64,000 bases of DNA from Haliotis cracherodii (GCF_022045235.1 NW_027266286.1:71610001-71674000), one strand, 5' to 3'. Numbered from the stretch's first letter, positions 5,781 through 31,888 are shown. Translations and numbers: made by a program. Notes: a model not told the origin generated them from the sequence alone.

Positions 5781-5813
5781 ATCCTAGAACTGTTACTTTC
5801 CCTTTCGATTTCG
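5781..5813 (-). promoter_or_regulatory. ISRE/IRF element (CGAAATCGAAAGGGAAAGT) with adjacent degenerate GAS, copy 1 promoter
   Basis: Three GAAA cores spaced by 2 nt at 5795-5813, ~153 bp upstream of the ATG; conserved in copies 3 and 5. Confidence 0.7.
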
Positions 5814-8459
5814 CATTCTAAGTATGTAGTAAGATAACCTTTATGATAATTAGAGGTCATGAAGACCCGATTTTCATTCAAAGTTAAGATACAGCCCCCT
5901 TGTGATTTTATAGACATTACATCTATCACAACTACGCCCCCAGTACGCCATGCTTGTCGTTAGAGCCGACGTATGAGGACTGAGTGCTTACAGGGCTTGG
6001 CTCATTGTATGTACCTAAGGCTAGGGTCGTTGCTCATACTGTCCCCCACTGTTTCCACTAAAGAAGTTCGATACATCTGATCAATCACCTGCATGTGTTT
6101 TACGTTTCTTCCCGTTTATGCAGTCGATGTGCAGTTAATGACTTATCATAGACGTTTCCTTAATATGCAGTATGAAGAAAATCTTGATATTTCACTCTTA
6201 TGAATTGGCCGAAAATCTATGTGTGTCAAATGTTTAAGAAACCAAACGTCATTCAATTCCAACGTTTATGAACTAAAATACATACTTACATGTCTTGCTT
6301 AGGTATAAGTACCCTTCACTGGACTGTTCGTATGAGTGTAATTGTGTTCGAATCCCAGATCACCACAAGATAAGTGAGTGAGTGACTTTGACTTTACACA
6401 TCCTTCGCAATAATTCTGGCAATACCATATGGAGACACCGGAATTAGGATTTTCACGTTTAACACGTGTGGGGTCACTCGGCGTTGTGAATAAATCACCA
6501 GGCTACCCCACGGCCCATAACCAATAAAGATCGTAAATGCATATGAAACATCTTAGCGTGTGGGTACCCAGAACACTACCATTTTAACTCCAGCAGGTAT
6601 GTATCACTTTGGAAAGTTAATTAACCCAATGATAAAATAAAACTCAGGTACACAACAAAAAGCATTAAACTTTGCAACTCCTATACAAAACAATTGACAG
6701 ATACACAAAAGACATGGTCTTTTGTCATAAACTTACTGTTTTCATTTGGTTTCATAAAAGAGTGTGAAATCAAAACACCTCCCTTGTGGGCTTGGTTATA
6801 CACTTATCACAGATGTGAAGTGCCTGTGTAAAAACGTTCATATCTGTTACTGAAGAAATATACTTGACATAGGGGGCAGAGTTACCTTGATACGTGGCGG
6901 GTAGAGTTACCTTGATACGTGGCATTTATCAGAAGAAATCTCTACTGCATTACACACACACGTTTCAGCTCTATCGTTCAAGTGACTGGAGAAACGCTGA
7001 CATAGAGTCCATAACAAAGTTTGCATTTGATTTGGATAGTTGTTGTGGTAGCAAATAATTATGTCATAACATACATGACATTTAAATGAAGCATATAGTT
7101 AACGTGAGAGACTGGCTCTCTTTATCTGTGACATTGATGATATATTGATGAATCAAATCAAATCAACATAGATCACCATTTATTCAATAATTCAAACGAT
7201 TAAAACGATCATTAAGATCAAAACGAATGACAGCAAATAATTATGTCATAACATACATGACATATATGTGAAGCAATTTGTTAACATGAGAGACTGGCTC
7301 CCTTTATCTGTGACATTGGTGCTGTATTGATGAATCAAAACAAATCAAACCAAATCGTTTTATTCAATATTTTGGTGAGACGCAACAATGAGAATGTGCA
7401 ATGTGAGCTTCAAACATCAGAATCAAATAATAAGGTTAACAATGACAATGTCAGAAGTACACTTTGAAGCAAACAATTAATTACGTATACATGTATATGG
7501 AAATAACAATATTTTACATGGTTAATACTTAAGGCACACAAAAAGTAAATAAAAGACAAGAGTGGAATATTGGTAAAAACCAGACACTCAAACATTGAGA
7601 GATGTTAATCATTGCAGTGATACAACATTTACACTTACACTGCAATTCATGAGCCAACTATTCCAGCACACCCCAAACACCATCTTGAGTCTTCATGAGC
7701 GTTCAGCTCGTAAAATCCCNNNNNNNNNNNNNNNNNNNNNNNNNNNNNNNNNNNNNNNNNNNNNNNNNNNNNNNNNNNNNNNNNNNNNNNNNNNNNNNNN
7801 NNNNNNNNNNNNNNNNNNNNNNNNNNNNNNNNNNNNNNNNNNNNNNNNNNNNNNNNNNNNNNNNNNNNNNNNNNNNCTTTACTAACTATTCATCACAAAG
7901 TGTTAATATTTTCTAGCTTTTTAGATATTTTTATCAAAGTTTAAGCATTTGTAATGGGTTTGTGTGACAAAGTGGATATTGGATGTCATTTTCTGCCTCA
8001 TATTTGTTGGTAAAAAGAAGACAGTGACTTGATGATTATATAGATTTTTCATGATTAATTAATTATAAAATGCAAAATGGTTCCTACGTTATTTTTTTCA
8101 CATGAATCAATTTGTCTGGTTTCATTCGTTGTAGGTAAAACAGTATCTTGAAATGATTACAATCCCAGATTTCAGAAATCCACACCAAAATGCATTAAAC
8201 ACAGTACCTTTTTAGACTAATGTTGCCACACATTTATGATCAAATCCATGAGCTTAAAAGCAACTCTACATGTGTATCTCATCTGATTATGTGAAATAAA
8301 ATAATATTGTCTGTACGAAAAAAATATATATACTGTGTGACACATTACTCTAAAGACATGTCATAGTATATACACATTATACTAATACAAACACCTACTC
8401 GGGCGATCTGTCATTGAATCTGCTCAAGATTATTTAATATAGTCCCATCAATCGAGGTA

Positions 8460-9250
8460 TCAATAGTAATCATCAGAATCATAGCTAATACCCATATCAT
8501 CATAATCGTTTGTATATCCAAAAGGATCGTCATAGTCAAAACGAACGTCATCGTCAGAAAGATCGTCATCGTCAAAAAGATCGTCATATTCCACGGGATG
8601 TACATATCTTCTTCCGGGGTCGACTCCGACATTGCAAATCCCACACCCACCAGCTTTTGGTATTCCCCCAACACTTTGCCCTCGTCCATATATCCCTGTA
8701 GAACTGAGGATCCTGTTTGATATGTCTATATCTTCTGTATAGAACACATCAACAAATACTTTGGATTGTTTCAGTGTTGAGTACCCAAAGCTTTGCTTTC
8801 GCAAGTACAAGTTGTTCATGACATTGAGTTTGATCAGGTTCTCTTTACAGAACATATCTGCTTCTGAATCAGCCTTTGTCAGAACCAAGGTAACATAATG
8901 TATTCGGTTGGGTGAAGGTTTGCAAAAGAAATCGGCAAAGTACAAATTTGATGAGCCATGAAACACCTCACTCAGCGGAACTTTAACTCTTGTGTTTCCA
9001 AATGGCGATTTTTCTGGTATAACACCTCCCTGTAGTGTAACCCCAAAAAAGAGTCCGCCAAGTCTGTTATTGATTGGACAGCGTGGATCACCTCCATTGT
9101 CTTTGAGTCTCGGTTTCATGATGCCATTGTACTTATTTTTGATATCCTGAAAGTAGCTGTTGGGTTTATTCCGGTACAGGTAATATACACCTTCAGATAT
9201 GCCACTCTGGCTGTGATCATTAGCTTTATCTAACAGCTTCTGAAGATATT
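8460..9250 (-). CDS. PHYHIPL: PHYHIP-like protein, copy 2 (type B, Asp/Tyr-rich tail), exon 2; ~274 aa with exon 1
   Basis: Acceptor ttttacag|AATAT at 9251-9252; intact domain with CGIC, then an acidic tail; frame matches exon 1. Confidence 0.88.
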
Positions 9251-9510
9251 CTGTAAAATGAATATGTAAATTATGTTTTAGTATAGATATCATGGAAGCC
9301 ATGTTAACATCGACGAAAAGTATTTCAAATTATTGTGACTCTCACAGATGAGAAATTATGTCCCATTCAATACCGACTGCATATCTGTCCGCCGCATTAT
9401 ACAACAGAAATACAAAATATGTCAGACGAGATCGTTTGAGCGATTCCTTTAGCACACAAAATACTATGAAAATACTGTAATAGTCATCTTGGACATAAGT
9501 ATATCCATAC

Positions 9511-9544
9511 CTTTTCCTGCATCTGTGCTTCCTCCTACAGCCAT
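9511..9544 (-). CDS. Exon 1 of copy 2 (MAVGGSTDAGK+G)
   Basis: ATGGCTGTAGGAGGAAGCACAGATGCAGGAAAAG|GTATGG; phase-1 donor joins exon 2 in frame (G|AA = Glu). Confidence 0.8.
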
Positions 9545-9681
9545 GATTGCAATATGGTTGCCGATACCTGTTCTGTGCATATGTTGGCTCTATTAATAGA
9601 AACAGAGTACTGTTGTGCAATAGGCCAGATTCTTTGTATTGAGGTAACTGACATAATGCTCAAGCGTATACAATGACAAGG

Positions 9682-9712
9682 TTCCTTGAATTTCTACTTT
9701 CATTTTCACTTC
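9682..9712 (-). promoter_or_regulatory. GAS (TTCCTTGAA) plus ISRE-like (GAAGTGAAAATGAAAGT) composite, copy 2 promoter
   Basis: GAS at 9682-9690; ISRE-like at 9696-9712, ~152 bp from the ATG, the same position as the type A element. Confidence 0.65.
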
Positions 9713-10389
9713 TATTTTCTGTGAGGTATAAGAAAGGCATTTTAGGTTATAACCAGTGTAATGCTAGATAGGGTATGATTCCCATGCAGGAAGTATCCGA
9801 GGTAGGATCAACACTACTTAGTGGTATGCAAGGAGTATATTATGGTATGCTAGGAGTCGGTTATTGACGTAGAAACCGTTGCATGATGTGCACACGTCAA
9901 ATCAGAGGTAACAAAAAGTCGTATATTTTCACTCATATTTTAACTAACTCACTCATTAGCTGCTTGATCTGAACCAAACGCTGCTTTACTGTTTAAACCG
10001 TTTTATGTAAGGTATCACCTATCTCTCCGATCGGTTTTCTTATCCGACTTCTTTCTATACAAAAGATGCTTTTGACACCATATATAATGGCTGCTTTCGT
10101 TTACGTGGTTCTAGCCAAAGCCACATATTCCCGAGAGCGTGGCTGATATCATATCCCATGTTCCCGAAGCGAATGTCTGGTTCCCTGGATGACCTGACAA
10201 AATGTGTTCATGGCCTAAAAAGCACTTATCGACTCCTTCATTTGTCTCGAAGTCGTAATCGAACATATCAAGTCTCTAATACCTTGAACTACGACGCATG
10301 TTCTTGATTCAGACATGATTCGGTATAGAATAGGTGCAATTGTTAAATCTTTGATAACACATATATCAAATAGACACAATGCTCAAAAC

Positions 10390-11460
10390 ATTATTATTAT
10401 ATTTACTATTTACATATTAGAATAAGAAATGCAGCAAAGAGGTTTTTGGTGATCCTGGCACGTCCGGGCTGGTTAGGCTCAACATCAGCTCAGGGCCCTT
10501 GCCCTACACGTTGCCCAGATAGCGAATGGGACTTCTCCTAGCAAGCGCTGCCTAGTCGAACCCACCCAAAACTTTTCGGAGAATGTGAAGACTCCCCAAC
10601 ACTGGAGCCTTCTGCATTACCCAGGTTGTCAGAAGAGCTGTATTCCTGGTAGCAAACCAGGGCACTCTCCCAATGTCAGTCAACAGATTGGGAGGTACAA
10701 ACCTAAGGCACAGAGAACAATGGGGAGTCTGACAACTTGGCACTTGGGATGCAAGCGTGATATTTCGAAAGCGAGGTCTGCATATTTGCCATGTTTTTCC
10801 TGAATCTTGTTAATTACATTAGTGTCAAAAGGGACAAAAAATTATCAAATAGGACAAGATTAGGTTTTTTGACCTGGATACGTCTGAGGCTGTGTACGGA
10901 CCTATTCTAAAGAATTTTGTATTTATCATTTTCCATGACGCCCTCTACATATTCCGGGTTGTACCATGGATGGACCTCTGTGTCAAAGCCACAAGCATAG
11001 CAAAGACGGTAATAAAATGATCGAGCCACTCCATCACGTCGCTTAAGATACTGTGTTTGTGCCAAAGCTGGGCATCCACTGACATTGTTGTTGACAGTCT
11101 CATTGAATTCATTGCATATTGTACATTTGATATTTACATGTTGATGCCAAATTACATGTTGACGGTTTCGAGTGGAAGTGACTGGCCTTCTGTTTTACTT
11201 TTGAGGCCAGTCGTCTCTATCCAAGCGAAGGACTCCGCAGGGTTGCTGATCTTCTCAACACACTGCATAACAACTCGAAGCAGTGGACCAGCGACACTGA
11301 CATTTACTTCTTCCGACACAAGATGAGAACCAAATTTGTTTCAAATTCGATTTTCCATATGGCCGGCACAACAGCTGTAATGAAAACCTATTCATTGTTA
11401 TTGTTCGTCTTCGACATGTGTAACGTTGGCCTCCTCCCATATTACCCTAACAAACTGTGA
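10390..11460 (-). mobile_element. Decayed RLE-type (R4/Dong-like) non-LTR retrotransposon 3' fragment; duplicate at ~20875-21925
   Basis: Remnants GCPALAQTQYLKR.DGVARSFY, P.LVLFD and VL.LRFVPPNL; (TAA)n tail; homologous to 50500-53470. Confidence 0.7.
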
Positions 11461-12856
11461 TAAACGTCATGCAAGGATGTCTCTGAGAGACGTTTGCAAA
11501 GTGGCATTAAACTAAACTCACTGTTTATATTTCCTTAACACTAACACGTTTAGCTTTTGTGAATATAGACCAACACAACACCGATTAGAGAAGCACTCTG
11601 AACATGCATTATCCCCTTTACATCATATAGTCAGATTAGTGCACCTTCCTTGTTTTCGATAAATTGAGACAACACTACAATACATCAAGATCTAACCTCT
11701 GTCTACCTGGACTAAGCATTCACTTAAATTTGCAATGTACATATTCGTATTCTTATTCTAATGTACAAGCTATCTCTTTTAGATTCTGATGCCCAAATTA
11801 GCTGTATATCCATATCAACACTGTCTCTCCTTTCCCACCAGAGACGTATATCAGGTAGCTGATACTACTGACAAGAGCCTCACATGAGCCTCACATGACA
11901 TGTGCCACGTATACGCAACGTTTCAGGAAGTGGAGCATTCCTGATTGGGCTATTGTTGGTAACCCCATATTAAGGCAGTGAGGTGAGGTGAGATGACACG
12001 CCGCGATAAACTATCATATAGCGACATCTGTGCCTGTGTGTTCCACCATGCACTGCACGGGGCAGGACAAGCCCACACGGGTTATTAATACCCTCTGTCA
12101 CCATTACAAGTTAACCTGAATGAATACAAAAACATACACATGATAAAGCGAGAGTTATTAATACAGTTTGGATTATTTATACACAGAGACCATATTCGAT
12201 TAAATGGTCATTTTATAGTATGTAACCATTGCTAGGGGAAGGTCTCCTGACACCTAGTAGTTGATCAGATGAATTTGCATGAATGTGCCTACCATTAAAA
12301 TGTTGATTGAATTTTCTTTAAATGATTTTCCAGAAACCTAGAGGACATGCTTATGAGCATTTACAATTTTGGTTAAAGGCATTATTCACCTTTTGTTTAG
12401 AACAAATTGTTGACCCATGTGGATTTCCAAAAAGTTAGTTGGACTAATTAATAAAGTAGCTATCGATTTGTTCTTCCAGTACTCAACAAATTAAACAAAA
12501 ATATAGCATCCATCAAGAATTTGGGACTTTTTGGAACTTTTATGAGTTTTAAATCTTAAACTGAAAAATACAGTTGTACAGACTTGCAGTTGTAATCAGC
12601 ATAGTTTCAATTTGCTAAATTCAAGTGTCTCCATTCACTGGGGCGTTCAATGTTTGGTCTCCAGAAGGAAATGCGATTTTATAGGCTATTTACAAGATTA
12701 ATCGAATCACATGAAAGACGAAAGAGTGAGCTATCTGCTCACATCAACTTAGTTAGCTGAAACGCCAAGGATCAAGTATTGGGGAACTATTCAGATCCGG
12801 GATGCCTGAGTTGTTACAATTTGAAAATGAAAAATAATTCATGTACAGATAGCTTT

Positions 12857-13584
12857 GATGCACGTCAATAGATGCTGGCATCTTTTGTTTCCTTATAACT
12901 ATGATGTACGTCAATAGATGCTGGCATCTTTTGTTTCCTTATAACTATGATGCACGTCAATAGATGCTGGCATCTTTTGTTTCCTTATAACTATGATGTA
13001 CGTCAATAGATGCTGGCATCTTTTGTTTCCTTATAACTATGATGCACGTCAATAGATGCTGGCATCTTTTGTTTCCTTATAACTATGATGCACGTCAATA
13101 GATGCTGGCATCTTTTGTTTCCTTATAACTATGATGTACGTCAATAGATGCTGGCATCTTTTGTTTCCTTATAACTATGATGCACGTCAATAGATGCTGG
13201 CATCTTTTGTTTCCTTATAACTATGATGCACGTCAATAGATGCTGGCATCTTTTGTTTCCTTATAACTATGATGTACGTCAATAGATGCTGGCATCTTTT
13301 GTTTCCTTATAACTATGATGTACGTCAATAGATGCTGGCATCTTTTGTTTCCTTATAACTATGATGCACGTCAATAGATGCTGGCATCTTTTGTTTCCTT
13401 ATAACTATGATGTACGTCAATAGATGCTGGCATCTTTTGTTTCCTTATAACTATGATGCACGTCAATAGATGCTGGCATCTTTTGTTTCCTTATAACTAT
13501 GATGCACGTCAATAGATGCTGGCATCTTTTGTTTCCTTATAACTATGATGCACGTCAATAGATGCTGGCATCTTTTGTTTCCTT
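12857..13584. repeat. 46-bp minisatellite, ~16 units (~2 units at 23920-24003)
   Basis: Unit gatgyacgtcaatagatgctggcatcttttgtttccttataactat. Confidence 0.95.
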
Positions 13585-13616
13585 TTGTAGTATCTATGCT
13601 TCCTCCTTCAGCTGTA
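13581..13616 (-). pseudogene. Decayed exon 1 (TAEGGSIDTTK) of a lost paralog; duplicate at ~24001-24035
   Basis: GCTGAAGGAGGAAGCATAGAT is identical to copy 5 exon 1, but ATG is ACA and the GT donor is lost. Confidence 0.6.
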
Positions 13617-14751
13617 CCTTTTACTGTCAATAAGGTCCGGGACAGAGCATACAAATCTTTAAAGATGTTTTGTCTTTTCGATGCCACAAAATGGAATTCA
13701 TACGCCAGACCATCTAAATACAACAACACCCTACCATATCTGATATAGACATAGTGTTTTGCCAGTATCTTCTCTTCAGCCCATCAGTACAGTTGAATAT
13801 TTCCATCAGTAAACACCGCTTGAGCATTCACAGTGTCTTTATTCTTTCTATAGCATGTAATGTAATGTATTTGTACATATATTTTGTTCCAGCATATGTG
13901 TAATATGATAAAGAACGTAGAGGAAAGTAAGGGGTAAAAATTTATTTCAAATGCACGGCGCACGTAAGCACAATGTAAATATAAAAACAGAAACCACACA
14001 CAATATGAAATACGAGTAGAAAGTAGTGGAATGCTTGATACTGATTGGTAAAAAGGAGGTATCCTTTTTCCTGCAGACACCTCATTTCCATGAAATCCCT
14101 TCTCACTGTGACTTCCAAGAAATGACTTGGTTAAGTCCAAGCTCTGCACACATACAACAGGTTGCGAAAAACTAATTATATTTCTACGGAGCGTTATTTT
14201 ATCAATTCTTTTGAAAAACGATGCATTTTGTAACAATCTGGAGTTAGTCAAGAGTAAAAGTAAATAGAATTGAGCGTGCACGAGTGTGTATGGTCTTACA
14301 CCGCCTTTAGCAATATTCAAGCAATAAGACGCCTGGGAACACTAACAATGGGCTTTACACATGTGGGAATCGAACCCGGGCCTTCAGCATGACGCGTAAA
14401 CGCTTTAAACACAAGGGTACCCCCATCTTCCCGAAAGTGAGAGAGAATAATTATGGTAGGACTGGAAGAATTTATAGAGAAGAAACAAATTCCAGGCCCC
14501 CTTAGAAAATCAAATGGTCGGTCACTGATGACAAGAGCAATTTGTTGGCAACATGTGCAACAACCGTATGACTGCCAACCATGGTGCCGCAAGCACATAT
14601 TAAAATTTACAGGTGGTCATTGCCATTTACACAAAATATCAGCTGTGTGTTTCTCGTCACATTTAATGACAGGCTATTATCGCTGATAATTCGGTGTATG
14701 TTCAGGCGTTCATGCACTTGTCTGATTATGAAGCAAAACACTCGATGGGTA

Positions 14752-15395: not shown

Positions 15396-16129
15396 CTGAA
15401 ATAGGAAATTTAAAATGAACACCATGATAACATCCGGTGGAGTACTGAAAATTAGAAACTTAAGATGAGATGACGTTTGTAATATCAAAACGTCAACGCC
15501 ATAGAATAATCAGTCTCGATTCCATAGGGCCATCCCAATGATGTTTCTAGGTTTGTCGGCACCATACCCGTGCTCGTGGGTTTCACCGAAGTGGTAAACG
15601 TCTGAGACCTGCATCACTTCGGGCTTTACCTGCTTTACAACTCTGTGTGAAAGTCTCATCACGTAGTAAACTTTCGAAAGAGTGCATGCTCTGTAATAGG
15701 CATGCTTTTGACTATGACAGCCACGTTATTAAGGCAAAATAGGGATGACAATGATATGCATGTGTCAGTTGATTTGTGACTCCAGGTGTTCGCGAAGCAG
15801 GACGATAAAGCATAAGAAGTGTTTAACATTCTTTGAAAAGCAATCCGTTCAAGCATCATTATATTTGTATTGTAAATTATATTTAATGAATTTGTTTTGT
15901 TTAAAATGTTTAAAAAAGATCTACAAATGAAAGCTTTGCTTTTTGAGTAAAGAATTGTGACCTTGACTTTTGTAGCTNNNNNNNNNNNNNNNNNNNNNNN
16001 NNNNNNNNNNNNNNNNNNNNNNNNNNNNNNNNNNNNNNNNNNNNNNNNNNNNNNNNNNNNNNNNNNNNNNNNNNNNNNNNNNNNNNNNNNNNNNNNNNNN
16101 NNNNNNNNNNNNNNNNNNNNNNNNNNNNN

Positions 16130-16300: not shown

Positions 16301-16333
16301 ATCCTAGAACTGATACTTTCCCTTTCGATTTCG
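16301..16333 (-). promoter_or_regulatory. ISRE/IRF element, copy 3 promoter
   Basis: actttccctttcgatttcg at 16315-16333. Confidence 0.65.
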
Positions 16334-20176: not shown

Positions 20177-20207
20177 TTCCTTGAATTTCTACTTTCATTT
20201 TCACTTC
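20177..20207 (-). promoter_or_regulatory. GAS plus ISRE-like composite, copy 4 promoter
   Basis: TTCCTTGAA at 20177-20185; actttcattttcacttc at 20191-20207. Confidence 0.65.
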
Positions 20208-22562
20208 TATTTTCTGTGAGGTATAAAAAGGCATTTCAGGTTATAACCAGTGTAATGCTAGATAGGGTATGATTCCCATGCAGGAAGTATCCGAGGTAGG
20301 ATCAAGACTACTTAGTGGTATGCAAGGAGTATATTATGGTATGTTAGGAGTCGGTTATTGACGTAGAAACCGTTGCATGCATGATGTGCACAAGTCAAAC
20401 CAGAGGTAACAAAAAGTCGCATATTTTCACTCATATTTTCACTAATTCACTCATTAAGTGATTGATCTGAACCAAACGCTGCTTTACTGTTTTATCCGTT
20501 TTATGTAAGGTATCAGCTATCTCTCCGCTCGGTATTCTTATCCGACTTCTTTCTATACAAAAGATGCTTTTGACACCATATATGATGGCTGCTTACGTTT
20601 ACGTGGTTCTAGCCAAAGCCACATATTCCTGAGAGCGTGGCTGATATCATATTCCATGTTCCCGAAGCGAATGTCTGGTTCCCTGGATGACCTGACAAAA
20701 TGTGTTCATGGCCTAAAAAGCACTTATCGACTCCTTCATTTGTCTCGAAGTCGTAATCGAACATATCAAGTCTCTAATACCTTGTACTACGACGCATGTT
20801 CTTGATTCAGACATGATTCGGTATTGAATAGGTGCAATTGTTACACATATATCAAATAGACACAATGCTCAAAACATTATTATTATTATATTTACTATTT
20901 ACATATTAGAATAAGAAATGCAGCAAAGAGGTGTTTGGTGATCCTGGCACGTCCGGGCTGGTTAGGCTCAACATCAGCTCAGGGCCCTTGCCCGTCTACA
21001 CGTTGCCCAGATAGCGAATGGGACTTCTCCTAGCAAGCGCTGCCTAGTCGAACCCACCCAAAACTTTTCGGAGAATGTGAAGACTCCCCAACACTGCAGC
21101 CTTCTGCACTACCCAGGTTGTCAGAAGAGCTGTATTCCTGGTAGCAAACTAGGGCACTCTGCCAATGTCAGTCAACAGATTGAGAGGTACCAAACCTAAG
21201 GCACAGAGAACAATGGGGAGTCTGACAACTTGGCACTTGGGATGCAAGCGTGATATTTCGTGATACATTACTGTCAAAAGGGACAAACATTTATCAAATA
21301 GGACAAGATTAGGTTTTTTGACCTGGATACGTCTGAGGCTGTGTACGGACCTATTCTAAAGAATTTTGTATTTATTATTTTCCATGACGCCCTCTACATA
21401 TTCCGGGTTGTACCATGGATGGACCTCTGTGTCAAAGCCACAAGCATGGCAAAGACGGTAATAAAATGATCGAGCCACTCCATCACGTTGCTTAAGATAC
21501 TGTGTTTGTGCCAAAGCTGGGCATCCACTGACAATGTTGTTGACAGTCTCATTGAATTCATTGCATATTCTACATTTGATATTTACATGTTGATGCCAAA
21601 TTACATGTTGACGGTTTCGAGTGGAAGTGACTGGTCTTGAGCAGGAAACAGAAAGCCTTCGGTTTTACTTTTGAGGCCAGTCGTCTCTATCCAAGCGAAG
21701 GACTCTGCAGGGTTGCTGATCTTCTCAACACACTGCATAACAACTCGAAGCAGTGGACCAGTGACACTGACATTTACTTCTTCCCACCCAAGATGAGAAC
21801 CAAATTTGTTTCAAATTCGATTTTCCATATGGCCGGCACAACAGCTGTAATGAAAACCTATTCATTGTTATTGTTCGTCTTCGACATGTGTAACGTTGGC
21901 CTCCTCCCATATTACCCTAACAAACTGTGATAAACGTCATGCAAGGATGTCTCTAAGAGACGTTTGCAAAGTGGCATTAAACTAAACTCACTGTTTATAT
22001 TTCCTTAACACTAACACGTTTAGCTTTTGTGAATATAGACCAACTTAACACCGATTAGAGAAGCACTCTGAGCATGCATTATCCCCTTTACATCATATAG
22101 TCAGATTAGTGCACCTTCCTTATTTCGATAATTTGAGACAATACTACAATACATNNNNNNNNNNNNNNNNNNNNNNNNNNNNNNNNNNNNNNNNNNNNNN
22201 NNNNNNNNNNNNNNNNNNNNNNNNNNNNNNNNNNNNNNNNNNNNNNNNNNNNNNNNNNNNNNNNNNNNNNNNNNNNNNNNNNNNNNACTAATGAAGATCT
22301 CATAGTGCTATCCAACTGAGATGCCGTGCCGCAGTTTAACACGAAGACCCCACTCATACACAGTATTCTGTCTCCGAGCCGAATAATACTTGGTTTAACC
22401 ACTTGATTCCGTGTGCCAGTCAGGGTACCGAACAGTACGATCTTTTAACGTCCTTTGGTAGACCCTCGACCTTGCTCTCTCCGGGCACACGCTCTATCCA
22501 CTGGACCATGGAGAAGTCGAATGAACACGGCGTAGTTGGAATAGATACAAATAAATACAAAG

Positions 22563-22690
22563 TGGGCTATATCCTGACTTTAAAAGATTTTGGTCGGGTC
22601 TTCATAACCTCTAATTTTCCTGGAAGGTTCTCTTAATCTATACTTAGAACGCGAAATCGAAAAGGGAAGTAACAGTTCAAGGATCAAGGA
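22563..22690 (+). promoter_or_regulatory. Inverted copy of the type A promoter module (GAS plus ISRE-like)
   Basis: Reverse complement of ~5775-5900; TTCCTGGAA at 22617-22625; CGAAATCGAAAAGGGAAGT at 22652-22670. Confidence 0.6.
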
Positions 22691-25419
22691 TGTGTGTGGC
22701 CTTGACAGTCTTGATAACTACAATTACTGGGGTATATATATCTAACCTCTGTCTACCTGGGCTTAACATTCACTTAAATTTGCAATGTACATATTCGTAT
22801 TCTTATTCTAATGTACAAGCTATCTCTTTTAGATTCTGATGCCCAAATTAGCTGTATATCCTTATCAACACTGTCTCTCCTTTCCCACCAGAGACGTATA
22901 TCAGGTAGCTGATACTACTGACAAGAGCCTCACATGAGCCTCACATGACATGTTCCACGTATACGCAACGTTTCAGGAAGTGGAGCATTCCTGATTGGGC
23001 TATTGTTGGTAACCCCATATTAAGGCAGTGAGGTGAGTTGAGATGACACGTCGCGATAAACTATCATATAGCGACATCTGTGCCTGTGTGTTCCACCATG
23101 CACTGCACGGGGCAGGACAAGCCCACACGGGTTATTAATACCCCATGTCACCATTACAAGTTAACCTGAATGAATACAAAAACATACACATGATAATGCG
23201 AGAGTTATTAATACAGTTTGGATTATTTATACACAGAGACCATATTCGATTAAATGGTCATTTCATAGTATGTAACCATTGCTAGGGGAAGGTCTCCAGA
23301 CACCTAGTAGTTGATCAGATGAATTTGCATGATTGTGCCTACCATTAAAATGTTGATTGAATTTTCTTTAAATGAAGGTGGCATTCCCGGAAACGTAGAG
23401 GACTTGCTTATGAGCATTGAAAATTTTGGTTAAAGGCATTATTCATCTTTTGTTTAGAACAAATTGTGGACCCATGTGGATTTCCCAAAAATTAGTTGGA
23501 CTAATTAATAAAGTAGCTAACGATTTGTTCTTCCAGTACTCAACAAATTAGACAAAAATATAGCATCCATCAAGAACTCGGGACTTTATTGGACCTTTTA
23601 TGAGTTCTTAATCTTAAACTGAAAAATACATTTTGTACAGACTTGCAGTTGTAATCAGCATAGTTCCAATTTGCTAAATTCAAGTGTCTCCATTCACTGG
23701 GGCGTTCAATGTTTGGTCTCCAGAAGGAAATGCGATTTTATAGGCTATTTACAAGATTAATCGAATCACATGAAAGACGAAAGAGTGAGCTATCTGCTCA
23801 CATCAACTCCACTTAGTTAGCTGTAACGCCAAGGATCAAGTATTGGCGAACTATTCAGATCCGGGATGCCTGAGTTGTTACAATTGAAAATGAAAAATAA
23901 TTCATGTACAGATAACTATGATGTACGTCAATAGATGCTGGCATCTTTTGTTTCCTTATAACTATGATGTACGTCAATAGATGCTGGCATCTTTTTTTTC
24001 CTTTTGCAGTATCTATGCTTCCTCCTTCAGCTGTACCTTTTACTGTCAATAAGGTCCGGGACAGAGCATACAAATCTTTAAAGATGTTTTGTCTTTTCGA
24101 TGCCACAAAATGGAATTCATACGCCAGACCATCTAAATACAACAACACCCAACCATATCTGATATAGACATAGTGATTTGCCAGTATCTTCTCTTCAGCC
24201 CATCAGTACAGTTGAATATTTCCATCAGTAAACACCGCTTTAGCATTCACAGTGTCTTTATTCTTTCTATAGCATGTAATGTAATGTATTTGTACATATA
24301 TTTTGTTCCAGCATATGGGTAATATGATAAAGAACGTAGAGGAAAGTAAGGGGTAAAAATTTATTTCAAATGCACGGCGCACATAAGCACAATGTAAATA
24401 TAAAAACAGAAACCACACACAATATGAAATACGAGTAGAAAGTAGTGGAATGCTTGATACTGATTGGTAAAAAGGAGGTATCCTTTTTCCTGCAGACACC
24501 TCATTTCCATGAAATCCCTTCTCACGGTGACTTCCAAGAAATGACTTGGTTAAGTCCAAGCACTGCACACACACAACAGGTTGCGAAAAACTAATTATAT
24601 TTCTACGGAGCGTTATTTTATCAATTCTTTTGAAAAACGATGCATTTTGTAACAATCTGGAGTTAGTCAAGAGTGAAGGTAAATAGTATTGAGCGTGCGC
24701 GAGTGTGTATGGTCTTACACCGCCTTTAGCAATATTCAAGCAATAAGACGCCTGGGAACACTAACAATGGGCTTTACACATGTGGGAATCGAACCCGGGC
24801 CTTCAGCATGACGCGTAAACGCTTTAAACACAAGGGTACCCCCATCTTCCCGAAAGTGAGAGAAAAATTATGGTAGGACTGGAAGAATTTATAGAGAAGA
24901 AACAAATTCCAGGCCCCCTTAGAAAATCAAATGGTCGGTGACTGATGACAAGAGCAATTTGTTGGCAACATGTGCAACGACCGTATGACTGCTAACCATG
25001 GTGCCGCAAGCACATATCAAAAATTAAAGGTGGTCATTGCCATTTACACAAAATATCAGCTGTGTGTTTCTCGTCACTTTTGAGAAGGTGAATGTTATTA
25101 TGTATTACATACCATATTTGGTATGTTATTGTATATTACAACACAGCAGCCTATCCGAAGCATAAGAAACATTTCCTCATGACATGAGCATCAATAACCG
25201 CTGCCGGGTGAAATAAGACATAATTAGAAATAACATTGCACCCAGCCGGAGTTCACATCCCTGTTGTATGGATGAGTTCGTTAAACATTACATTTAACCA
25301 AAATGAGATCAGCTTTATGTCTTGCATTTAATGGCAGGCTATTATCACTGATAATTTGGTGTATGTTCTGGCGTTCATGCACTTGTCTGATTATGAAGCA
25401 AAACACTCGATGGGTATTT

Positions 25420-26123
25420 CTAGAAGGAATCCTCGCGATTAAATGCTGCCAGTAGCTTGCGAAGCAGCTCATTCAAAGATGTATCCCCAACATTGCATAT
25501 ACTGCAGCCCACAGTCTTCCTTATTCCACCTCGTGTGCTGTGGCCTTGACCAAAGGTATCAGTAGGGGCCAGAACCCTGTGTGTCATGTTCACGGCCTCT
25601 GTATACATGACCTCCACGTGAACTGCAGGACGGTCCAGTGTCTCGTATGTGCCAGATAAGTATGTTTTTTTTCGCAAATAAATGTTGGTGTACGAATCAA
25701 GCTTCAGCAGGTGTGTCTTACAGAAACTGTCTGCCTCCGATCCTGAATGTGTCAGAACCAAGGTGACGTAGTGAACACGCCTGCGTGAGGGCTTGCAATA
25801 GAAGTCAGCAAAATACAGATTTGCTGAATCATCAAAAACCTCGCTCAGTGGCATTTTTACTCTCGTGTCTCCAAAAGGCGACATATCTGGCAGATGTCCA
25901 TTCCTAAGTGTCACGTTAAAGAAAAGACCCTTCAGTCTCCCATTTATTGGACAGCGTTGGTCTCCGCCATTGTCCTTCAGATAAGGTTCCATGATGTTAT
26001 TGTGGTTCTGCCGAATGTCCACGAAATAGGAGGATGGCTTGTTGCGATAGAGGGTAGACACAGTATCAATACTGCCCCCACTGCAGGGGTCCTCAGCTTT
26101 GCGGAGCAGCTTTCTCAGATATT
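25420..26123 (-). CDS. PHYHIPL: PHYHIP-like protein, copy 5 (type A), exon 2; ~245 aa with exon 1
   Basis: Acceptor attgcag|AATAT at 26124-26125; intact domain ending CSICNVGDTSLNELLRKLLAAFNREDSF*. Confidence 0.88.
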
Positions 26124-26580
26124 CTGCAATAGGAAATGTACAAGCTGCAGCATGGTTACATCCGGTGCAGTACTGACAATTATAAACGTAGTATGAGATG
26201 AAAAATAGGCACAACAGTGATGAATGGATGAATGGATCACTGAAAGTCAGTGATAGCACGGCGAAAGGGGTAAACATGTAGATATTAGACAAGACAGCAT
26301 GATACGTTCTTAAATGAGCAGTCCATTGAACTGTCAATTTATTTTGCTTAATAAATTATATACAATTTATTCGTTTTGTGGACTAAACATAGGGAAGTCA
26401 TATTTGAATAAAAATCTTCAAATGAAAGTGTTGCTTTAAGTTAAGATTTGTTATGTCTTGTGGCCTGTAAGTCTAAGGTTAATTATATGTCGAATCCCCC
26501 TAGATATTTATGAATACCAAGTGAAACACGAATAACAACTTTCAAGACATGTTTTTTAAAAACTTTTTCCCTTGTAGACT

Positions 26581-26829
26581 GACCCGTGAAGACTCGGGGT
26601 AGAATAGGTCCTCAGCAGCCCATCTTGCCATAAAATGCGACTATGCTTGTCGTAAGAGGCGACTAACGGGATAGGGTGGTCAGGCTCGCTGACTTGGTTG
26701 ATGCACGTCATCGTATCCCAATTGCGTGGATCGATGCTCATGATATTAATCTCTGGATTGTCTGGTCCAGACTCGATTATTTACAGACCGCCGTCATATA
26801 GCTGTAATACTGCTGAGTGCGGCGTTAAA
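26581..26829 (+). mobile_element. SINE family 1
   Basis: TSD ccttgtagactg on both sides. Confidence 0.85.
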
Positions 26830-27109
26830 CCTTGTAGACTGGTGAGGGCAAACGAATAAATTATATCAAAAGTTAAATTTGTCTTAAGGAATCTTAGGTT
26901 TTCTGTTTCTTTAATTTTATGCTGTTTGTTTTACACCCTTTATTTTGTCGACATCCCTAAAATATATCAGATAATGGAGAATAGTTTCCAAAGTTACTAT
27001 GCTTCACTGCGTCAACAGTATCATGAAACAAACTTCAAGGATTTTTAGTTCGGAAAAAGATAAGTAGTCGTTCGTCCCTAAAATGTGCTTTGTACCCATC
27101 TCTTATTCC

Positions 27110-30100
27110 CAAAGTTGGACAACATCTAACAAAACAAGGCATGTTAATAACAGCTGGACAGCATCTTACCAAACAAGGCATGTTAATAACAGCTGGACAA
27201 CATGTAACCAAGCAAGGCATGTTAATAATAGTTTGCAAACATCTAAGCAAGCAAGCCATGTTAATAAAAGTTTGCCAACATCAAACCAAACAAGGCATGT
27301 TGATGACAGCTGGACAACATCTAGTCAAACAAGGCATGTAAATAACAACTGGAGAGCATCTTACCAAACAAGGCATGTTAATAACAGCTGAACAACATCT
27401 AACAAAACAAGGCATGTTAATAACAGCTGGACAGCATCTTACCAAATAAGGCATGTTAATGACAGCTGGACAACATCTAACCAAACAAGGCATGTTAATG
27501 ACATCTGAACAACATCTAACCAACCAAGGCATGTTAATAACAGCTGGACAACATCTAGTCAAACAAGGCATGTTTACAACAGTTGGACAACAGCTAAGCA
27601 CACAAGGCATGTTAATAACAGTTGGACAACATCTAAGCAAGCAAGGCATGTTAATAACAGTTGGACAACATCTAACCAAACAAGGCATATTAATAACAGT
27701 TGGACAACATCTAACCAAACAAGGCATGTTAATAACAGTTGGACAACATCTAAGCAAGCAAGGCATGTTAACAACAGTTGGACAACATCTAAGCAAGCAA
27801 GGCATATTAATAACAGTTGGACAACATCTAACCAAACAAGGCATATTAATAACAGTTGGACAACATCTAAGCAAGCAAGGCATGTTAATAACAGTTGGAC
27901 AACATCTAACCAAACAAGGCATGTTAATAACAGTTGGACAACATCTAAGCAAGCAAGGCATGTTAATAACAGTTGGACAACATCTAACCAAACAAGGCAT
28001 ATTAATAACAGTTGGACAACATCTAGTCAAACAAGGCATGTTAATAACAGTTTGCTAACATGTAACCAAACAAGGCATGTATATTACAGTTGAACAACAT
28101 CTAACCAAACAAGGCATGTTACTGACAGTTGGACAATATCTAATCAAAAAAGGCATGTTTATAACAGCTGGACAATATCTAACCAAGCAAGGCATGTTAA
28201 TAACCGTTTGACAATATCTAAGGAAGCAAGGCATGTGAATAACAGCTGGACAACATCTAACCAAACAAGGCATGTTAACAACATTTGGACAACATCTAAC
28301 CAGACAAGGCATGTTAATGACAGTTGGACAACATCTAAGCAAGCAAGGCATGTTAATAACAGTTTGCTAACATGTAACCAAACAAGGCATGTTGATGACA
28401 GGTGGACAACATCTAAGCAAGCAAGGAATGTAAATAACAGTTTGCCAACATCTAGTCAAACAAGGCATGTTAATAACAGGTGGACAACATCTCACCAAAC
28501 AAGGCATCTTGATGACAGTTGGACAACATCTAACCAAACAAGGCATGTTAATAATAGCTGGACAACATCTAGTCAAACAAGGCATGTTTATAACAGCTGG
28601 ACAACATCTAACCAAACAAGACATGTTAATAACAGCTGGATAACACCTAGTCAAACAAGGGATGTTAATAACAGGTGGACAACATCTAACCAAACAAGGC
28701 ATGTGAATAACAGTTTGCCAACATCTAACCAAACAAGGCATGTGAATAACTGCTGGACAACATCTAGTCAAACAAGGCATGTTAATATCAGTTTGCCAAC
28801 ATCTAGGCAGGCAAGACATGTTAATAACAGTTTGCCAACATCAAAGCAAGCAAGGCATGTTAATAACAGCTGGACAATATCTAACCAAACAAGGCATGTC
28901 AATGACAGTTAGACAACATCTAACCCAACAAGGCATGTTAATAACAGTTGGACAATATATAACCAAACAAGGCATATTAATAACAGCTGGACAGCATCTA
29001 ACCAATCAAGGACATGTTGATGACAGTTTCCAACATCTAAGCAAGCAAGGCATGTTAATAACAGTTTGTTAACATCTAACCAAACAAGACATGTTGATGA
29101 CAGGTGGACGACATCTAACCAAGCAAGGAATGTTAAGAACAGTTTGCAAACATCTAAGCAAGCAAGGCATGTTAATAACAGCTGGACAACATCTAAGCAA
29201 GCAAGACATGTTAATAACAGCTGGATAACACCTAGTCAAACAAGGGATGTTAATAACAGGTGGACAACATCTAACCAAACAAGGCATGTTAATAACAGTT
29301 TGCCAACATCTAACCAAAACAAGGCATGATAATAACAGCTGGACAACATCTAGTCAAACAAGGCATGTTTATAACAGTTTGCCAACATCTAACCAAACAA
29401 GGCATGTTAATAACAGGTGGACAACATCTAACCAAACAAGGCATGTTAATAAAAGCTGGACAACATCTAACCAAACAAGGCATGTTAATAACAGCTGGAC
29501 AATATCTAACCAAACAAGGCATGTAAATAACAGCTGGACAACATCTAAGCAAGCAAGGCATAGTAATAACATTTGGAGAACATCTAACCAAACAAGGCAT
29601 GCTAATAACAGCTGGACAACATCTAAGCAAACAAGGCATGTTAATAACAGCTGGACAACATCTAAGCAAACAAGGCATGTTAATAACAGCTGGACAACAT
29701 CTAACCAAACAAGGCATGTTAATAACAGTTTGCCAACATCTAACCAAACAAGGCATGCTAATAACAGCTGGACAACATCTAACCAAACAAGGCATGCTAA
29801 TAACAGCTGGACAACATCTAAGCAAACAAGGCATGTTAATAACAGCTGGACAACATCTATCCAAACAAGGCATGTTAATAACAGTTGGACAACATCTAAG
29901 CAAGCAAGGCATGTTAATAACAGTTGGACAACATCTAACCAGACAAGGCATATTAATAACAGTTGGACAACATCCAGTCAAACAAGGCATGTTAATAACA
30001 GTTTGCTAACATTTAGCCAAACAAGGCATGTATATTACAGTTGGACAACATCTAATCAAAGAAGGCATGTTAATAACAGCTGGACAATATCTAACCAAAC

Positions 30101-30965
30101 AAGGCATGTTACTGACAGTTGGACAATATCTAATCAAAAAAAGGCATGTTAATAACAGCTGGACAATATCTAACCAAGCAAGGCATGTTAATAACCGTTT
30201 GACAATATCTAAGGAAGCAAGGCATGTGAATAACAGCTGGACAACATCTAACCAAACAAGGCATGTTAACAACATTTGGACAACATCTAACCAGACAAGG
30301 CATGTTAATGACAGTTGGACAACATCTAAGCAAGCAAGGCATGTTAATAACAGTTTGCTAACATGTAACCAAACAAGGCATGTTGATGACAGGTGGACAA
30401 CATCTAAGCAAGCAAGGAATGTAAATAACAGTTTGCCAACATCTAGTCAAACAAGGCATGTTAATAACAGGTGGACAACATCTCACCAAACAAGGCATCT
30501 TGATGACAGTTGGACAACATCTAACCAAACAAGGCATGGTAATAACAGCTGGACAACATCTAGTCAAACAAGGCATGTTAATAACATTTGGAGAACATCT
30601 AACCAAACAAGGCATGTTAATAACATTTGGAGAACATCTAACCAAACAAGGCATGTTAATAACAGCTGGACAACATCTAACCAAACAAGGCATGTTAATA
30701 ACAGTTGGACAACATCTAACCAAACAAGGCATGTTAATAACAGCTGGACAACATCTAACCAAACAAGGCATGTTAATAACAGTTTGCCAACATTTAGCCA
30801 AAGTAGGCATGTGTATTACAGTTGGACAACATCTGATCTAAGAGGGCAATGTTTATGACACTTTGACAACGTCAAACCAACCAAAGCATGTTTATTTTAG
30901 TTGGACAACATTTAACAAAGGAAAGTATTTGATGACAGTTTGACAACATCTAACCAACATCTGAC
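27110..30965. repeat. 39-bp satellite, ~100 units, in intron 1 of copy 5
   Basis: Consensus aacaaggcatgttaataacagctggacaacatctaacca. Confidence 0.97.
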
Positions 30966-31295: not shown

Positions 31296-31355
<60 letters not shown>

Positions 31356-31481
31356 AAGGGTTATTGTTTAAATCTGAAAATATTCTCTGTGTTTAGCTCA
31401 AGGACAAGAGATGATTTCAAAATGTATGAGGCAAACTCAGTGTCACCCTCGTGCAGGTGGATGAAGTACGAGCTATTATAA

Positions 31482-31515
<34 letters not shown>

Positions 31516-31585
31516 GCCACACACACACACACACACTCACACGCCACACACACACACTCACACGCCACACACACACGCCACGCAC
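31296..31585. repeat. (TAG)n and (CA)n microsatellites
   Basis: At 31296-31355 and 31483-31585. Confidence 0.95.
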
Positions 31586-31608
31586 AGAAACACGTTTTGT
31601 ATCTCTAC

Positions 31609-31642
31609 CTTTCTCATCATCTATGCTTCCTCCTTCAGCCAT
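31609..31642 (-). CDS. Exon 1 of copy 5 (MAEGGSIDDEK+G)
   Basis: ATG..GAGAAAG|GTAGAG; phase 1; intron 26124-31608 contains the 39-bp satellite. Confidence 0.78.
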
Positions 31643-31820
31643 TACGGATTCTCAACCTACTTCCTTTCCTAGTTCCTTCTTCATACGGTGACTGGACTAG
31701 TAATGTTTGTTATTCGTATACGTTGGCACTATTATTATCCCAATACACTCGTGTGCAAACATGTCTGTATTGCCGTATCCAACTGTTAACTGCTCGTCAA
31801 CAACCTTGACATGTACGTGG

Positions 31821-31888
31821 ATCCTAGAAATGTTACTTTCGCTTTCGATTTCGCATTCTAGGTATGGAGTAAAATAACCTTCCTGGAA
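31821..31888 (-). promoter_or_regulatory. ISRE (CGAAATCGAAAGCGAAAGT) and perfect GAS (TTCCTGGAA), copy 5 promoter
   Basis: ISRE at 31835-31853; GAS at 31880-31888. Confidence 0.72.

What the first reader, a model, noticed from the sequence alone, without database searches (positions are those of the whole stretch)
5781..31888. Positionally conserved GAS+ISRE composite promoter upstream of five paralogs
Type A copies carry a triple-GAAA ISRE (5795, 16315, 31835). Type B copies carry TTCCTTGAA, 5 nt, then GAAGTGAAAATGAAAGT (9682, 20177). The types align (atcctagaa-N5-actttc vs ttccttgaa-N5-actttc) and lie 152-153 bp from the ATG in copies 1 and 2 although the flanks have diverged. Copy 5 adds a perfect TTCCTGGAA. 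GAAANNGAAA (IRF) and TTCN3GAA (STAT) are established ISG signatures, and molluscs encode IRF and STAT factors. Function here is inferred.
Basis: partly seen in the sequence, partly recalled or inferred. Interest (0 to 1): 0.85.

Follow-up and report, generated by a model that had tools for sequence, protein, structure and literature searches.

The report
IRF/STAT-type promoter module in abalone genes
A short DNA module resembling vertebrate interferon-response sites (an IRF site next to a STAT-like site) is conserved about 100-150 bases upstream of the transcription start of one subfamily of tandemly duplicated abalone PHYHIP-C genes, so these genes are good but untested candidates for virus-inducible immune genes.

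Summary
The window comes from black abalone (Haliotis cracherodii), and its genes lie on the minus strand. On that strand, GAAANNGAAAGT sits 5 nt upstream of TTC[T/A]AGGA[T/A] in front of five two-exon PHYHIP_C genes.

The five copies are not independent. Copies 1/3 and 2/4 belong to a 10.5 kb tandem duplication that is 94-97% identical. I found five more copies: an inverted gene-less fragment in the window and four elsewhere on the chromosome.

RNA contigs from three abalone species splice gene 2 and end at 9568, 30 bp below a TATA box. That places the module at -114 to -151, in a real promoter.

Between the old A and B promoter types only three blocks stay conserved: the module, the TATA block and the ATG. 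10 of the 11 A/B differences in the module fall at degenerate consensus positions (P=0.002). Consensus positions are hit only in the two dead copies.

The genome encodes IRF and STAT, and ISRE-spacer-GAS composites are 3-6 fold over control genome-wide.

Still untested: factor binding and inducibility. The A-type proximal "GAS" is also one base off consensus.

First-stage notes on other pieces of this genome report ISREs upstream of TRIM, macro-E3 and IFI44L genes; these are unchecked.

Verdict: a probable functional IRF(/STAT) module, and a new member of a known kind.

The parts
5781..5812 (-). G1 (type A) composite: TTCTAGGAT (5781-5789), 5-nt spacer, triple-GAAA ISRE GAAATCGAAAGGGAAAGT (5795-5812)
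5720..5727 (-). G1 TATA-like box (TATATATC), 68 bp downstream of the ISRE. The predicted start near 5697 is inferred.
5610..5658 (-). G1 exon 1 (ATG at 5642, MAEGGSINVEK). An RNA-like contig of the same species covers it with 0 mismatches. The splice donor is hidden in gap 5438-5609.
9682..9719 (-). G2 (type B) composite: perfect GAS TTCAAGGAA (9682-9690), 5-nt spacer, ISRE GAAGTGAAAATGAAAGT (9696-9712), and one more GAAA up to 9719
9591..9598 (-). G2 TATA box (TATTAATA) with the adjacent conserved GCCAAC (9583-9588)
9511..9568 (-). G2 exon 1. The transcript 5' end is at about 9568, where a contig end abuts Illumina adapter. ATG at 9544.
   Evidence: record 24, loose end at 9568
9251..9510 (-). 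G2 intron 1 (GT..AG), spliced out in RNA contigs of three species
   Evidence: table 5
8460..9250 (-). G2 exon 2, encoding the PHYHIP_C domain (PF19281, E=1e-32)
16301..16332 (-). G3 composite, a near-duplicate of G1 (97% identical promoter)
20177..20214 (-). G4 composite, a near-duplicate of G2. A 24-bp deletion brings it to 128 bp from the ATG.
31821..31888 (-). G5 (type A) composite: TTCTAGGAT (31821-31829), ISRE (31835-31852) and an upstream palindromic GAS TTCCAGGAA (31880-31888). ATG at 31642, TATA at 31730-31737. Intron 1 holds a 3.8 kb 39-bp satellite.
22617..22684 (+). Inverted, gene-less promoter fragment: GAS TTCCTGGAA (22617-22625), ISRE with GAAAGT changed to GGAAGT (22653-22670), TTCAAGGAT (22676-22684). 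It has no exon 1 and lies in an insertion next to gap 22155-22286.
36167..36500 (-). G6 promoter (ATG 36166, TATA 36302-36309) WITHOUT the module. It serves as an internal contrast.
47797..48130 (-). G8 promoter (ATG 47796, TATA 47869-47876 plus GCCAAC) WITHOUT the module. It serves as an internal contrast.

Best explanation
The 33-bp block is a functional proximal-promoter module of one subfamily of abalone PHYHIP_C genes: G1-G5 here, plus two genes just upstream of the window and one at 46.9 Mb.

Anatomy: two to four GAAA hexamer repeats form an IRF-type ISRE / IRF-E. A fixed 5-nt spacer follows, then TTC[T/A]AGGA[T/A], a STAT-type GAS or GAS half-site. Most A-type copies carry a second, palindromic GAS about 45 bp further upstream.

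Position: the module sits 68-98 bp upstream of a TATA box. In G2 that is about -114 to -151 from the transcription start.

Proposed mechanism (inferred): an abalone IRF binds the GAAA repeats once it is activated by nucleic-acid sensing. A STAT-like or other partner binds the adjacent half-palindrome. Together they switch on or boost transcription of these genes during infection. Paralogs without the module (G6, G8 and the other clusters) would not respond.

Shown here: the sequence, its promoter position, its selective conservation, and the presence of IRF and STAT genes. Inferred: which factor binds, and whether the genes are inducible.
For: 1. Real promoter. RNA contigs from three species splice out 9251-9510. 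One ends at 9568 directly against adapter sequence, 30 bp below TATTAATA at 9591-9598.

2. Selective conservation.
- Among A-type copies, identity is 0.88-0.92 in the module against 0.52-0.78 in the flanks.
- Between A and B it is 0.74 in the module, 0.73 at TATA/GCCAAC, 0.86 at the ATG, and 0.31-0.56 elsewhere.
- The A and B genes are about 1 substitution per site apart at the protein level.

3. Pattern of differences. Of the 11 A/B differences in the 33-bp block, 10 fall at positions that are N in the a-priori consensuses GAAANNGAAAST and TTCNNNGAA (hypergeometric P=0.0017). There are no indels.

4. Decay in dead copies. Only two copies have changes at consensus positions. One is the gene-less inverted fragment. 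The other lies upstream of a paralog with an in-frame stop.

5. Specificity. The degenerate 27-mer has 8 exact sites in 1.18 Gb and 0 in the reversed control. Seven of the eight lie upstream of a gene of this subfamily; the eighth is the gene-less inverted fragment.

6. Trans factors. The genome has at least 2 IRF genes and at least 1 STAT gene.

7. Recurring grammar. ISRE-N1-30-TTCCNGGAA occurs 13 times against 2 in the control, and 11 of the 13 have spacers of 9 nt or less. ISRE-N3-9-TTCNNNGAA occurs 58 times against 19. One such site lies directly upstream of a RING-finger ORF.

8. Literature. Oyster and shrimp IRFs activate ISRE reporters, and shrimp IRF binds a native ISRE of Vago4 (PMC5869526; PMC4602278).
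Against: - No expression data under viral or dsRNA challenge, and no binding data.
- G2 transcripts are present in three ordinary RNA data sets, so expression is at least partly constitutive.
- The A-type proximal site TTCTAGGAT fails the TTCN3GAA consensus. G1/G3 have also lost the upstream perfect GAS.
- A-versus-B similarity (22-23 of 33) lies within the range of the best chance matches when all offsets are allowed. The case therefore rests on position and on where the differences fall.
- The triple-GAAA pattern is not enriched genome-wide (180 against 170), because of (GAAAGT)n microsatellites.
- No ISRE-GAS composite lay near the TLD (IFI44-type) genes I located.
- Cross-species promoter footprinting could not be done. 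The nearest species in the read data differs by only about 2.5%.
- The evidence from dead copies is two cases only.
Confidence: 0.55

Rival explanations
1. The block is a functional cis-element, but a different factor reads it and it controls tissue-specific or developmental expression rather than immune induction. Candidates are a PRDM1/Blimp-1-type zinc finger (which recognises AGTGAAAGT-like sites overlapping IRF sites), a BCL6-like factor on TCCTAGAA, or an unknown lineage-specific factor.
For: - The conservation data show constraint, not the identity of the factor.
- G2 is expressed in unstimulated-looking RNA sets of three species.
- The A-type TTCTAGGAT is not a canonical GAS.
- The B-type sequence AGTGAAAAT / ATGAAAGTA resembles PRDM1 sites (from established knowledge of PRDM1/IRF site overlap).
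Against: - The a-priori ISRE consensus is met exactly in all live copies.
- IRF genes are present.
- The same ISRE-short spacer-GAS order recurs at unrelated loci, including upstream of a RING-finger gene. This fits an IRF/STAT grammar better than a single-factor site.
Confidence: 0.25
2. The block has no function. It is a remnant of the ancestral promoter that happens to be better preserved, or was locally homogenised by gene conversion among paralogs, and it resembles ISRE/GAS by chance.
For: - All copies descend from one ancestral promoter, so motif counts against shuffles overstate independence.
- Two of the pairs are 94-97% identical duplicates.
- A-versus-B identity of 22/33 is not above the best chance match over all offsets.
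Against: - Gene conversion would give identical tracts including flanks. Instead A and B differ at 11 of 33 positions, and 10 of the 11 are degenerate consensus positions (P=0.0017).
- The spacing is indel-free while the surrounding sequence is full of indels.
- The module is as conserved as the start of the coding sequence.
- It decays only in the gene-less copy and the pseudogene copy.
Confidence: 0.1

Closest known systems
Vertebrate ISRE and IRF-E / PRDI-type hexamer repeats (GAAANNGAAAST; the GAAAGT repeats of the IFN-beta promoter)
   Same: Two to four GAAA cores at 6-bp phase, with a GAAAGT end. They lie in the proximal promoter within about 150 bp of the start, upstream of a TATA box.
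   Different: No interferon is known in abalone. The binding factor is not identified. The target genes have no vertebrate ISG counterpart.
Vertebrate composite ISRE+GAS promoters, such as the GBP and IRF-family genes (from established knowledge)
   Same: An IRF-type site and a STAT-type TTCN3GAA site sit a few bases apart, with fixed spacing across copies.
   Different: In type A the proximal site is one base off the GAS consensus. The order ISRE then GAS with a 5-nt spacer is specific to this family; other abalone loci use 4-9 nt. No STAT binding has been shown.
Shrimp Vago4 ISRE bound by L. vannamei IRF (PMC4602278)
   Same: A native invertebrate ISRE that controls a lineage-specific immune gene. 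There, IRF binding was shown by EMSA and reporter assay.
   Different: The shrimp site is a single ISRE in the 5'UTR. Here the site is an upstream composite shared by about 8 paralogs, and it is untested.
Oyster IRF / IFN-like pathway (PMC5869526, PMC8218723)
   Same: Mollusc IRFs activate ISRE and IFN-beta reporters. Oyster CgIFNR-3 activates human ISRE, STAT3 and GAS reporters.
   Different: Those assays used mammalian response elements. In the open literature I searched, I found no native mollusc ISRE-GAS promoter module described.
Vertebrate PHYHIP / PHYHIPL
   Same: The PHYHIP_C domain (PF19281) is present, E=1e-29 to 1e-38.
   Different: The abalone genes are two-exon and lack FN3: a 9-23 aa exon 1 plus the domain. 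They are tandemly expanded, with at least 24 domain exons in the genome. No immune role is known for the vertebrate proteins.

Membership tests
ISRE / IRF-E (IRF-binding element) | Match to the consensus GAAANNGAAA(C/G)T | tested here: met
   Exact match in G1-G5 on the gene strand, and in the three copies outside the window. The inverted solo copy has GGAAGT.
ISRE / IRF-E (IRF-binding element) | Located in a promoter or enhancer of a transcribed gene | tested here: met
   In G2 the module lies at -114 to -151 from the RNA contig 5' end at 9568. TATA is at 9591-9598, and the transcript is spliced in three species.
ISRE / IRF-E (IRF-binding element) | A cognate IRF factor is encoded by the organism | tested here: met
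   PF00605 matches above cut-off at two loci, C2:52.91 Mb and C12:81.33 Mb.
ISRE / IRF-E (IRF-binding element) | Bound by an IRF protein | not testable with these tools
   Needs EMSA, DAP-seq or ChIP.
GAS (STAT-binding element) | Palindromic TTCN3GAA | tested here: inconclusive
   Met in type B (TTCAAGGAA) and in the upstream site of G5, the inverted copy and the three outside copies (TTCCWGGAA). Not met at the proximal A-type site (TTCTAGGAT), and the upstream site is absent in G1/G3.
GAS (STAT-binding element) | STAT factor encoded and binding | tested here: inconclusive
   A STAT_bind domain gene is present at C8:25.99 Mb. Binding is not testable here.
Interferon-stimulated-gene-like (virus/dsRNA-inducible) gene | Transcript induced by virus, dsRNA or an IFN-like cytokine | not tested
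   Only unlabelled RNA contigs were available. No open paper links PHYHIP-like genes to mollusc immunity.
PHYHIP family | PHYHIP_C domain | tested here: met
   PF19281, 103-133 bits in five window ORFs.
PHYHIP family | N-terminal fibronectin type III domain, as in vertebrate PHYHIP/PHYHIPL | tested here: not met
   The gene models are a 9-23 aa exon 1 plus the domain exon. The RefSeq abalone proteins of 215-291 aa carry only PF19281.

The most novel reading that the evidence does not exclude
Abalone may run an interferon-like transcriptional programme through a native composite code: an IRF-type ISRE, a 4-9 nt spacer, then a STAT-type GAS. The FN3-less PHYHIP_C proteins would then be a so far unrecognised family of ADP-ribosyltransferase-fold antiviral effectors driven by that code and evolving under positive selection. 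In the youngest pair, G2 and G4, all 18 differing codons change the amino acid.
Probability: 0.2. Interest if true: 0.75.

Novelty: new member of a known kind. Interest (0 to 1): 0.5.

Why it matters
Abalone antiviral signalling is poorly understood. The genomes lack MAVS and have divergent RLR and STING genes (PMC11103948). Mollusc IRF work has relied on mammalian reporter elements.

This finding offers a native, short and well-delimited promoter module. Its start site is mapped. It also has natural controls: paralogs without the module, and decayed copies. That gives a direct reagent for asking whether mollusc IRF and STAT factors drive an ISG-like regulon.

It also nominates a lineage-specific, fast-evolving gene family as candidate effectors. 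This is relevant to herpesvirus (HaHV-1) disease in farmed abalone and to conservation of an endangered species.

Tried and rejected
The read data reach only species about 2.5% diverged, and most differences were not listed.
- Triple-GAAA pattern genome-wide: not enriched (180 against 170), dominated by (GAAAGT)n microsatellites.
- IFI44-type positive control: TLD-domain genes were located, but none lies near a composite site.
- Literature link between PHYHIP-like genes and mollusc immunity: none found in the main text of the searched papers, nor in the supplements of one OsHV-1 study.
- Transposon origin: rejected. The 27-mer has only 8-10 sites genome-wide. All but one chance-like hit belong to this gene subfamily: upstream of its genes, or in the gene-less inverted fragment.
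- Heat-shock element: rejected. The GAA/TTC units are not at the nGAAnnTTCn spacing.
- NF-kB site (GGGRNNYYCC): rejected. There is no match.
- Ets-IRF composite (GGAANNGAAA): rejected. The GGA(A/T) lies 3' of the GAAA repeats and 14 nt away.
- An ISRE 3.5 kb upstream of the C34 paralog: it lies inside a retroelement-like ORF, so it was discounted.
- Foldseek against PDB for the domain model: no match at E of 0.001 or better.
Full report
**What the region is.** The window is G000:C23:71610001-71674000 of a 1.18 Gb abalone genome. One window ORF is 100% identical to a Haliotis cracherodii RefSeq protein on a contig of the same length, 76,751,615 bases. The organism is therefore black abalone.

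The genes of interest lie on the minus strand. They are two-exon genes. A short exon 1 encodes MA(E/V)GG... (9-23 aa), and one large exon encodes a PHYHIP_C domain (PF19281, E=1e-29 to 1e-38). Exon-1 ATGs lie at these positions:
- 5642 (G1)
- 9544 (G2)
- 16163 (G3)
- 20063 (G4)
- 31642 (G5)
- 36166 (G6)
- 39949 (G7, probably dead)
- 47796 (G8)

**Checking the observation.**
- Type A (G1, G3, G5) reads GAAATCGAAAG(G/C)GAAAGT, then 5 nt, then TTCTAGGAT.
- Type B (G2, G4) reads GAAGTGAAAATGAAAGT, then 5 nt, then TTCAAGGAA.

GAAANNGAAAGT occurs 5 times in the window against 0.14 expected from shuffles. The 25-nt composite with up to 3 mismatches occurs 6 times against 0.02.

The quoted 152-153 bp from the ATG holds for G1, G2 and G3. 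It is 128 bp in G4 and 193 bp in G5, and the distance to the TATA box varies from 68 to 98 bp. The exact equality is partly coincidence.

**Independence and gaps.** A self-comparison shows a 10.5 kb tandem duplication, roughly 4540-15097 against 15097-25800, at 94-97% identity. G1/G3 and G2/G4 are therefore recent duplicates, and the window holds three independent promoter lineages.

The assembly gaps fall at homologous places in both units. One pair lies right after exon 1 of G1 and G3. The other pair lies in the G2/G4 3' regions. Sequence on both sides is collinear between the two units. Contig ends at the edges of the 7720-7876 gap run into (CA)n. No gap separates a motif from its ATG. The splice donors of G1 and G3 are unread. 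I filled nothing.

**Is it a promoter?** Contigs of three RNA-like runs were laid on the window: the same species plus two related ones. All skip 9251-9510, which is GT..AG on the minus strand. G2 is therefore transcribed and spliced. One contig ends at 9568 and is followed directly by Illumina adapter. The high-depth contigs of the other two runs stop at about 9553 and 9558. A conserved, palindromic TATA box, CTATTAATAG, lies at 9590-9599 (core TATTAATA at 9591-9598), which is 30 bp upstream of 9568. The start site is thus about 9568, and the module lies at -114 to -151. A contig of the same species also covers G1 exon 1 (5610-5658) without mismatch.

**More copies.** The degenerate 27-mer GAAANNGRAAGTANNANTTCWAGGAWC has 8 exact sites in the whole genome and none in the reversed control. 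Allowing two mismatches adds one more in this cluster and one chance-like hit elsewhere. Seven of the eight exact sites, and the added cluster site, lie upstream of a PHYHIP_C gene with the same exon 1. The eighth exact site is the gene-less inverted fragment in the window. Two of the extra genes lie just before the window, and one is 25 Mb away at 46.9 Mb. Most A-type copies also carry a perfect palindromic GAS, TTCCWGGAA, about 45 bp upstream of the ISRE. G1 and G3 lack it. In a related species' DNA, paralogous contigs align only over the module and then read into the same GAS (loose ends at 5836/5841).

**Conservation.** I aligned nine promoter copies.
- Among A-type copies, identity is 0.88-0.92 across the module and 0.52-0.78 in the flanks.
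- Between A and B there are three peaks only: the module (0.74), the TATA/GCCAAC block (0.73) and the ATG region (0.86). Elsewhere it is 0.31-0.56.

The A and B genes are old, about one substitution per site apart at the protein level.

Within the 33-bp block, A and B differ at 11 positions. Ten of them are N positions of the a-priori consensuses GAAANNGAAAST and TTCNNNGAA (hypergeometric P=0.0017). There are no indels, although the surroundings are full of them.

Only two copies carry changes at consensus positions. One is the gene-less inverted fragment. The other lies upstream of a paralog with an in-frame stop.

A caveat: the raw best ungapped A/B match (22-23 of 33) is not above the best chance match if all offsets are allowed. 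The argument therefore rests on position, spacing and where the differences fall.

**Distribution in the family.** The genome has at least 24 PHYHIP_C domain exons. I fetched 6 kb upstream of the others. None has an ISRE near its exon 1, and G6, G7 and G8 in the window also lack it. In a maximum-likelihood tree, B (G2, G4) is sister to a group holding G6 with its relative, plus the A types, with support 86/85-87. The simplest reading is one origin before the A/B split followed by loss in the G6 lineage. The support is only moderate.

**Trans factors and grammar.** The genome encodes at least two IRF genes and at least one STAT gene. Two genome-wide counts bear on a shared grammar:
- An ISRE followed within 30 nt by TTCCNGGAA occurs 13 times against 2 for the reversed control. 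11 of the 13 have spacers of 9 nt or less.
- ISRE-N3-9-TTCNNNGAA occurs 58 times against 19.

One such site (C30:1232321) lies directly upstream of a RING-finger ORF. Another lies upstream of an uncharacterised Haliotis gene. First-stage notes on other pieces of this genome report ISREs upstream of TRIM, macro-E3 and IFI44L genes. I could not check them. The TLD (IFI44-type) genes I located are not near a composite site.

**What the genes encode.** An AlphaFold model of the G2 domain exon is confident (pLDDT 85, pTM 0.80). Foldseek finds nothing significant. In the wide structural search every score is weak (Z 3.6 or less). However, nearly all 40 reported rows are ADP-ribosyltransferase-fold proteins: DarT, PARPs, tankyrase, Tpt1/KptA, diphtheria- and pertussis-type toxins, OspC3/CopC and Rhs toxin domains. 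That is a hint at a divergent ART-like fold, not a demonstration.

G2 and G4 differ at 18 codons, and every one of them changes the amino acid. This fits positive selection.

**Mechanism.** My best reading, at 0.55, is that an IRF binds the GAAA repeats and a STAT-like or other partner binds the neighbouring half-palindrome at fixed spacing. This would make the subfamily inducible by infection. The sequence, position, constraint and presence of the factors are shown. Binding and induction are inferred.

There are two rivals. In the first, the same constrained element is read by another factor such as PRDM1 or BCL6 types (0.25). In the second, it is a functionless remnant (0.10).

**Relation to what is known.** The elements match vertebrate ISRE / IRF-E and GAS consensuses and the idea of composite ISRE+GAS promoters. 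In invertebrates, shrimp IRF binds a native ISRE of Vago4 (PMC4602278). Oyster IRFs and an IFN-receptor-like protein activate mammalian ISRE/GAS reporters (PMC5869526; PMC8218723). I found no open paper that describes a native mollusc ISRE-GAS module or links PHYHIP-like genes to mollusc immunity. I therefore rate this a new member of a known kind.

**Limits.** Deep cross-species footprinting and annotation of the other composite sites were therefore not possible.

Noticed in passing
window 8460-9250 vs 18949-19767: The exon-2 coding sequences of G2 and G4 differ at 18 codons, and all 18 change the amino acid (0 synonymous). The surrounding non-coding DNA differs by about 6%. This looks like positive selection after the duplication.
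   Followed up: partly
window 8460-9250 (model m29a92a12b3ef): The confident AlphaFold model of the PHYHIP_C domain has no significant Foldseek match. Nearly all 40 weak rows of the wide structural search (Z 2.0-3.6) are ADP-ribosyltransferase-fold proteins (DarT, PARPs, Tpt1, diphtheria/pertussis-type toxins, OspC3/CopC). The fold may be a divergent ART-like one.
   Followed up: partly
L065 (G000:C30:1232321-1232345, minus strand): GAAAACGAAAGT-AGGA-TTCCTGGAA lies directly upstream of an ORF with a C3HC4 RING finger (E=3e-9). This is another ISRE-GAS composite, in front of a TRIM-like gene.
   Followed up: partly
L064 (G000:C13:13967764-13967791): An ISRE-N7-TTCCTGGAA composite lies about 200 bp upstream of the ATG of a 230-aa ORF. 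Its only relative found is an uncharacterised Haliotis rubra protein (57% identity), and it has no Pfam domain.
   Followed up: partly
L033 (C1:64047184); L034-L036 (C1:74274826, 74281927, 74288246): More promoter-like ISRE plus perfect GAS pairs. L033 has TTCTAGGAA 24 bp upstream of GAAAATGAAAGTGAAAGT. Three tandem copies about 7 kb apart have GAAACCGAAAGTGAAAGT followed 31 nt later by TTCTCAGAA. The downstream genes were not identified.
   Followed up: no
G000:C56:65.86-68.23 Mb; C2:48997448 and 49002376; C12:47712613: Identical ISRE-spacer-GAS strings recur: GAAAGAGAAACTTACGTCATTTCATTGAA five times, and GAAACGGAAACT(T/G)CATTCTAGGAA several times. This suggests further gene families or repeats that carry the composite.
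   Followed up: no
window 27113-30957: A 3.8 kb satellite of a 39-bp unit (98.5 copies, 85% matches) fills most of intron 1 of G5. It gives long spurious ORFs on both strands.
   Followed up: partly
window 12849-13584 and 36683-37112: Two tandem arrays: a 46-bp unit (16 copies, 98% matches) between the duplicated units, and a 53-bp unit (8 copies) in G6 intron 1.
   Followed up: no
window 5438-5609 / 15978-16129 and 7720-7876 / 18260-18391: The gaps sit at homologous positions of the two duplicated units. Contig ends at the 7720-7876 gap edges run into (CA)n. In paralogs, (GT)n-rich sequence follows exon 1, where the 5438-5609 / 15978-16129 gaps lie. The gaps probably mark repeats that the assembler could not cross.
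   Followed up: partly
window 35598, 35870, 39336: Perfect palindromic GAS sites (TTCCAGGAA) lie in intron 1 of G6 and G7, the paralogs that lack the promoter ISRE.
   Followed up: no
window 3-283, 2789-3058 (inverted), 26570-26830, 37858-38091, 40116-40370: A repeat of about 260 bp at 81-92% identity is scattered through the cluster in both orientations. It is probably a short interspersed element.
   Followed up: no
G000:C4:22710413-22714985: A long (GAAAGT)n / (GAAAAT)n microsatellite array. Arrays like this swamp genome-wide counts of tandem IRF-type hexamers.
   Followed up: no
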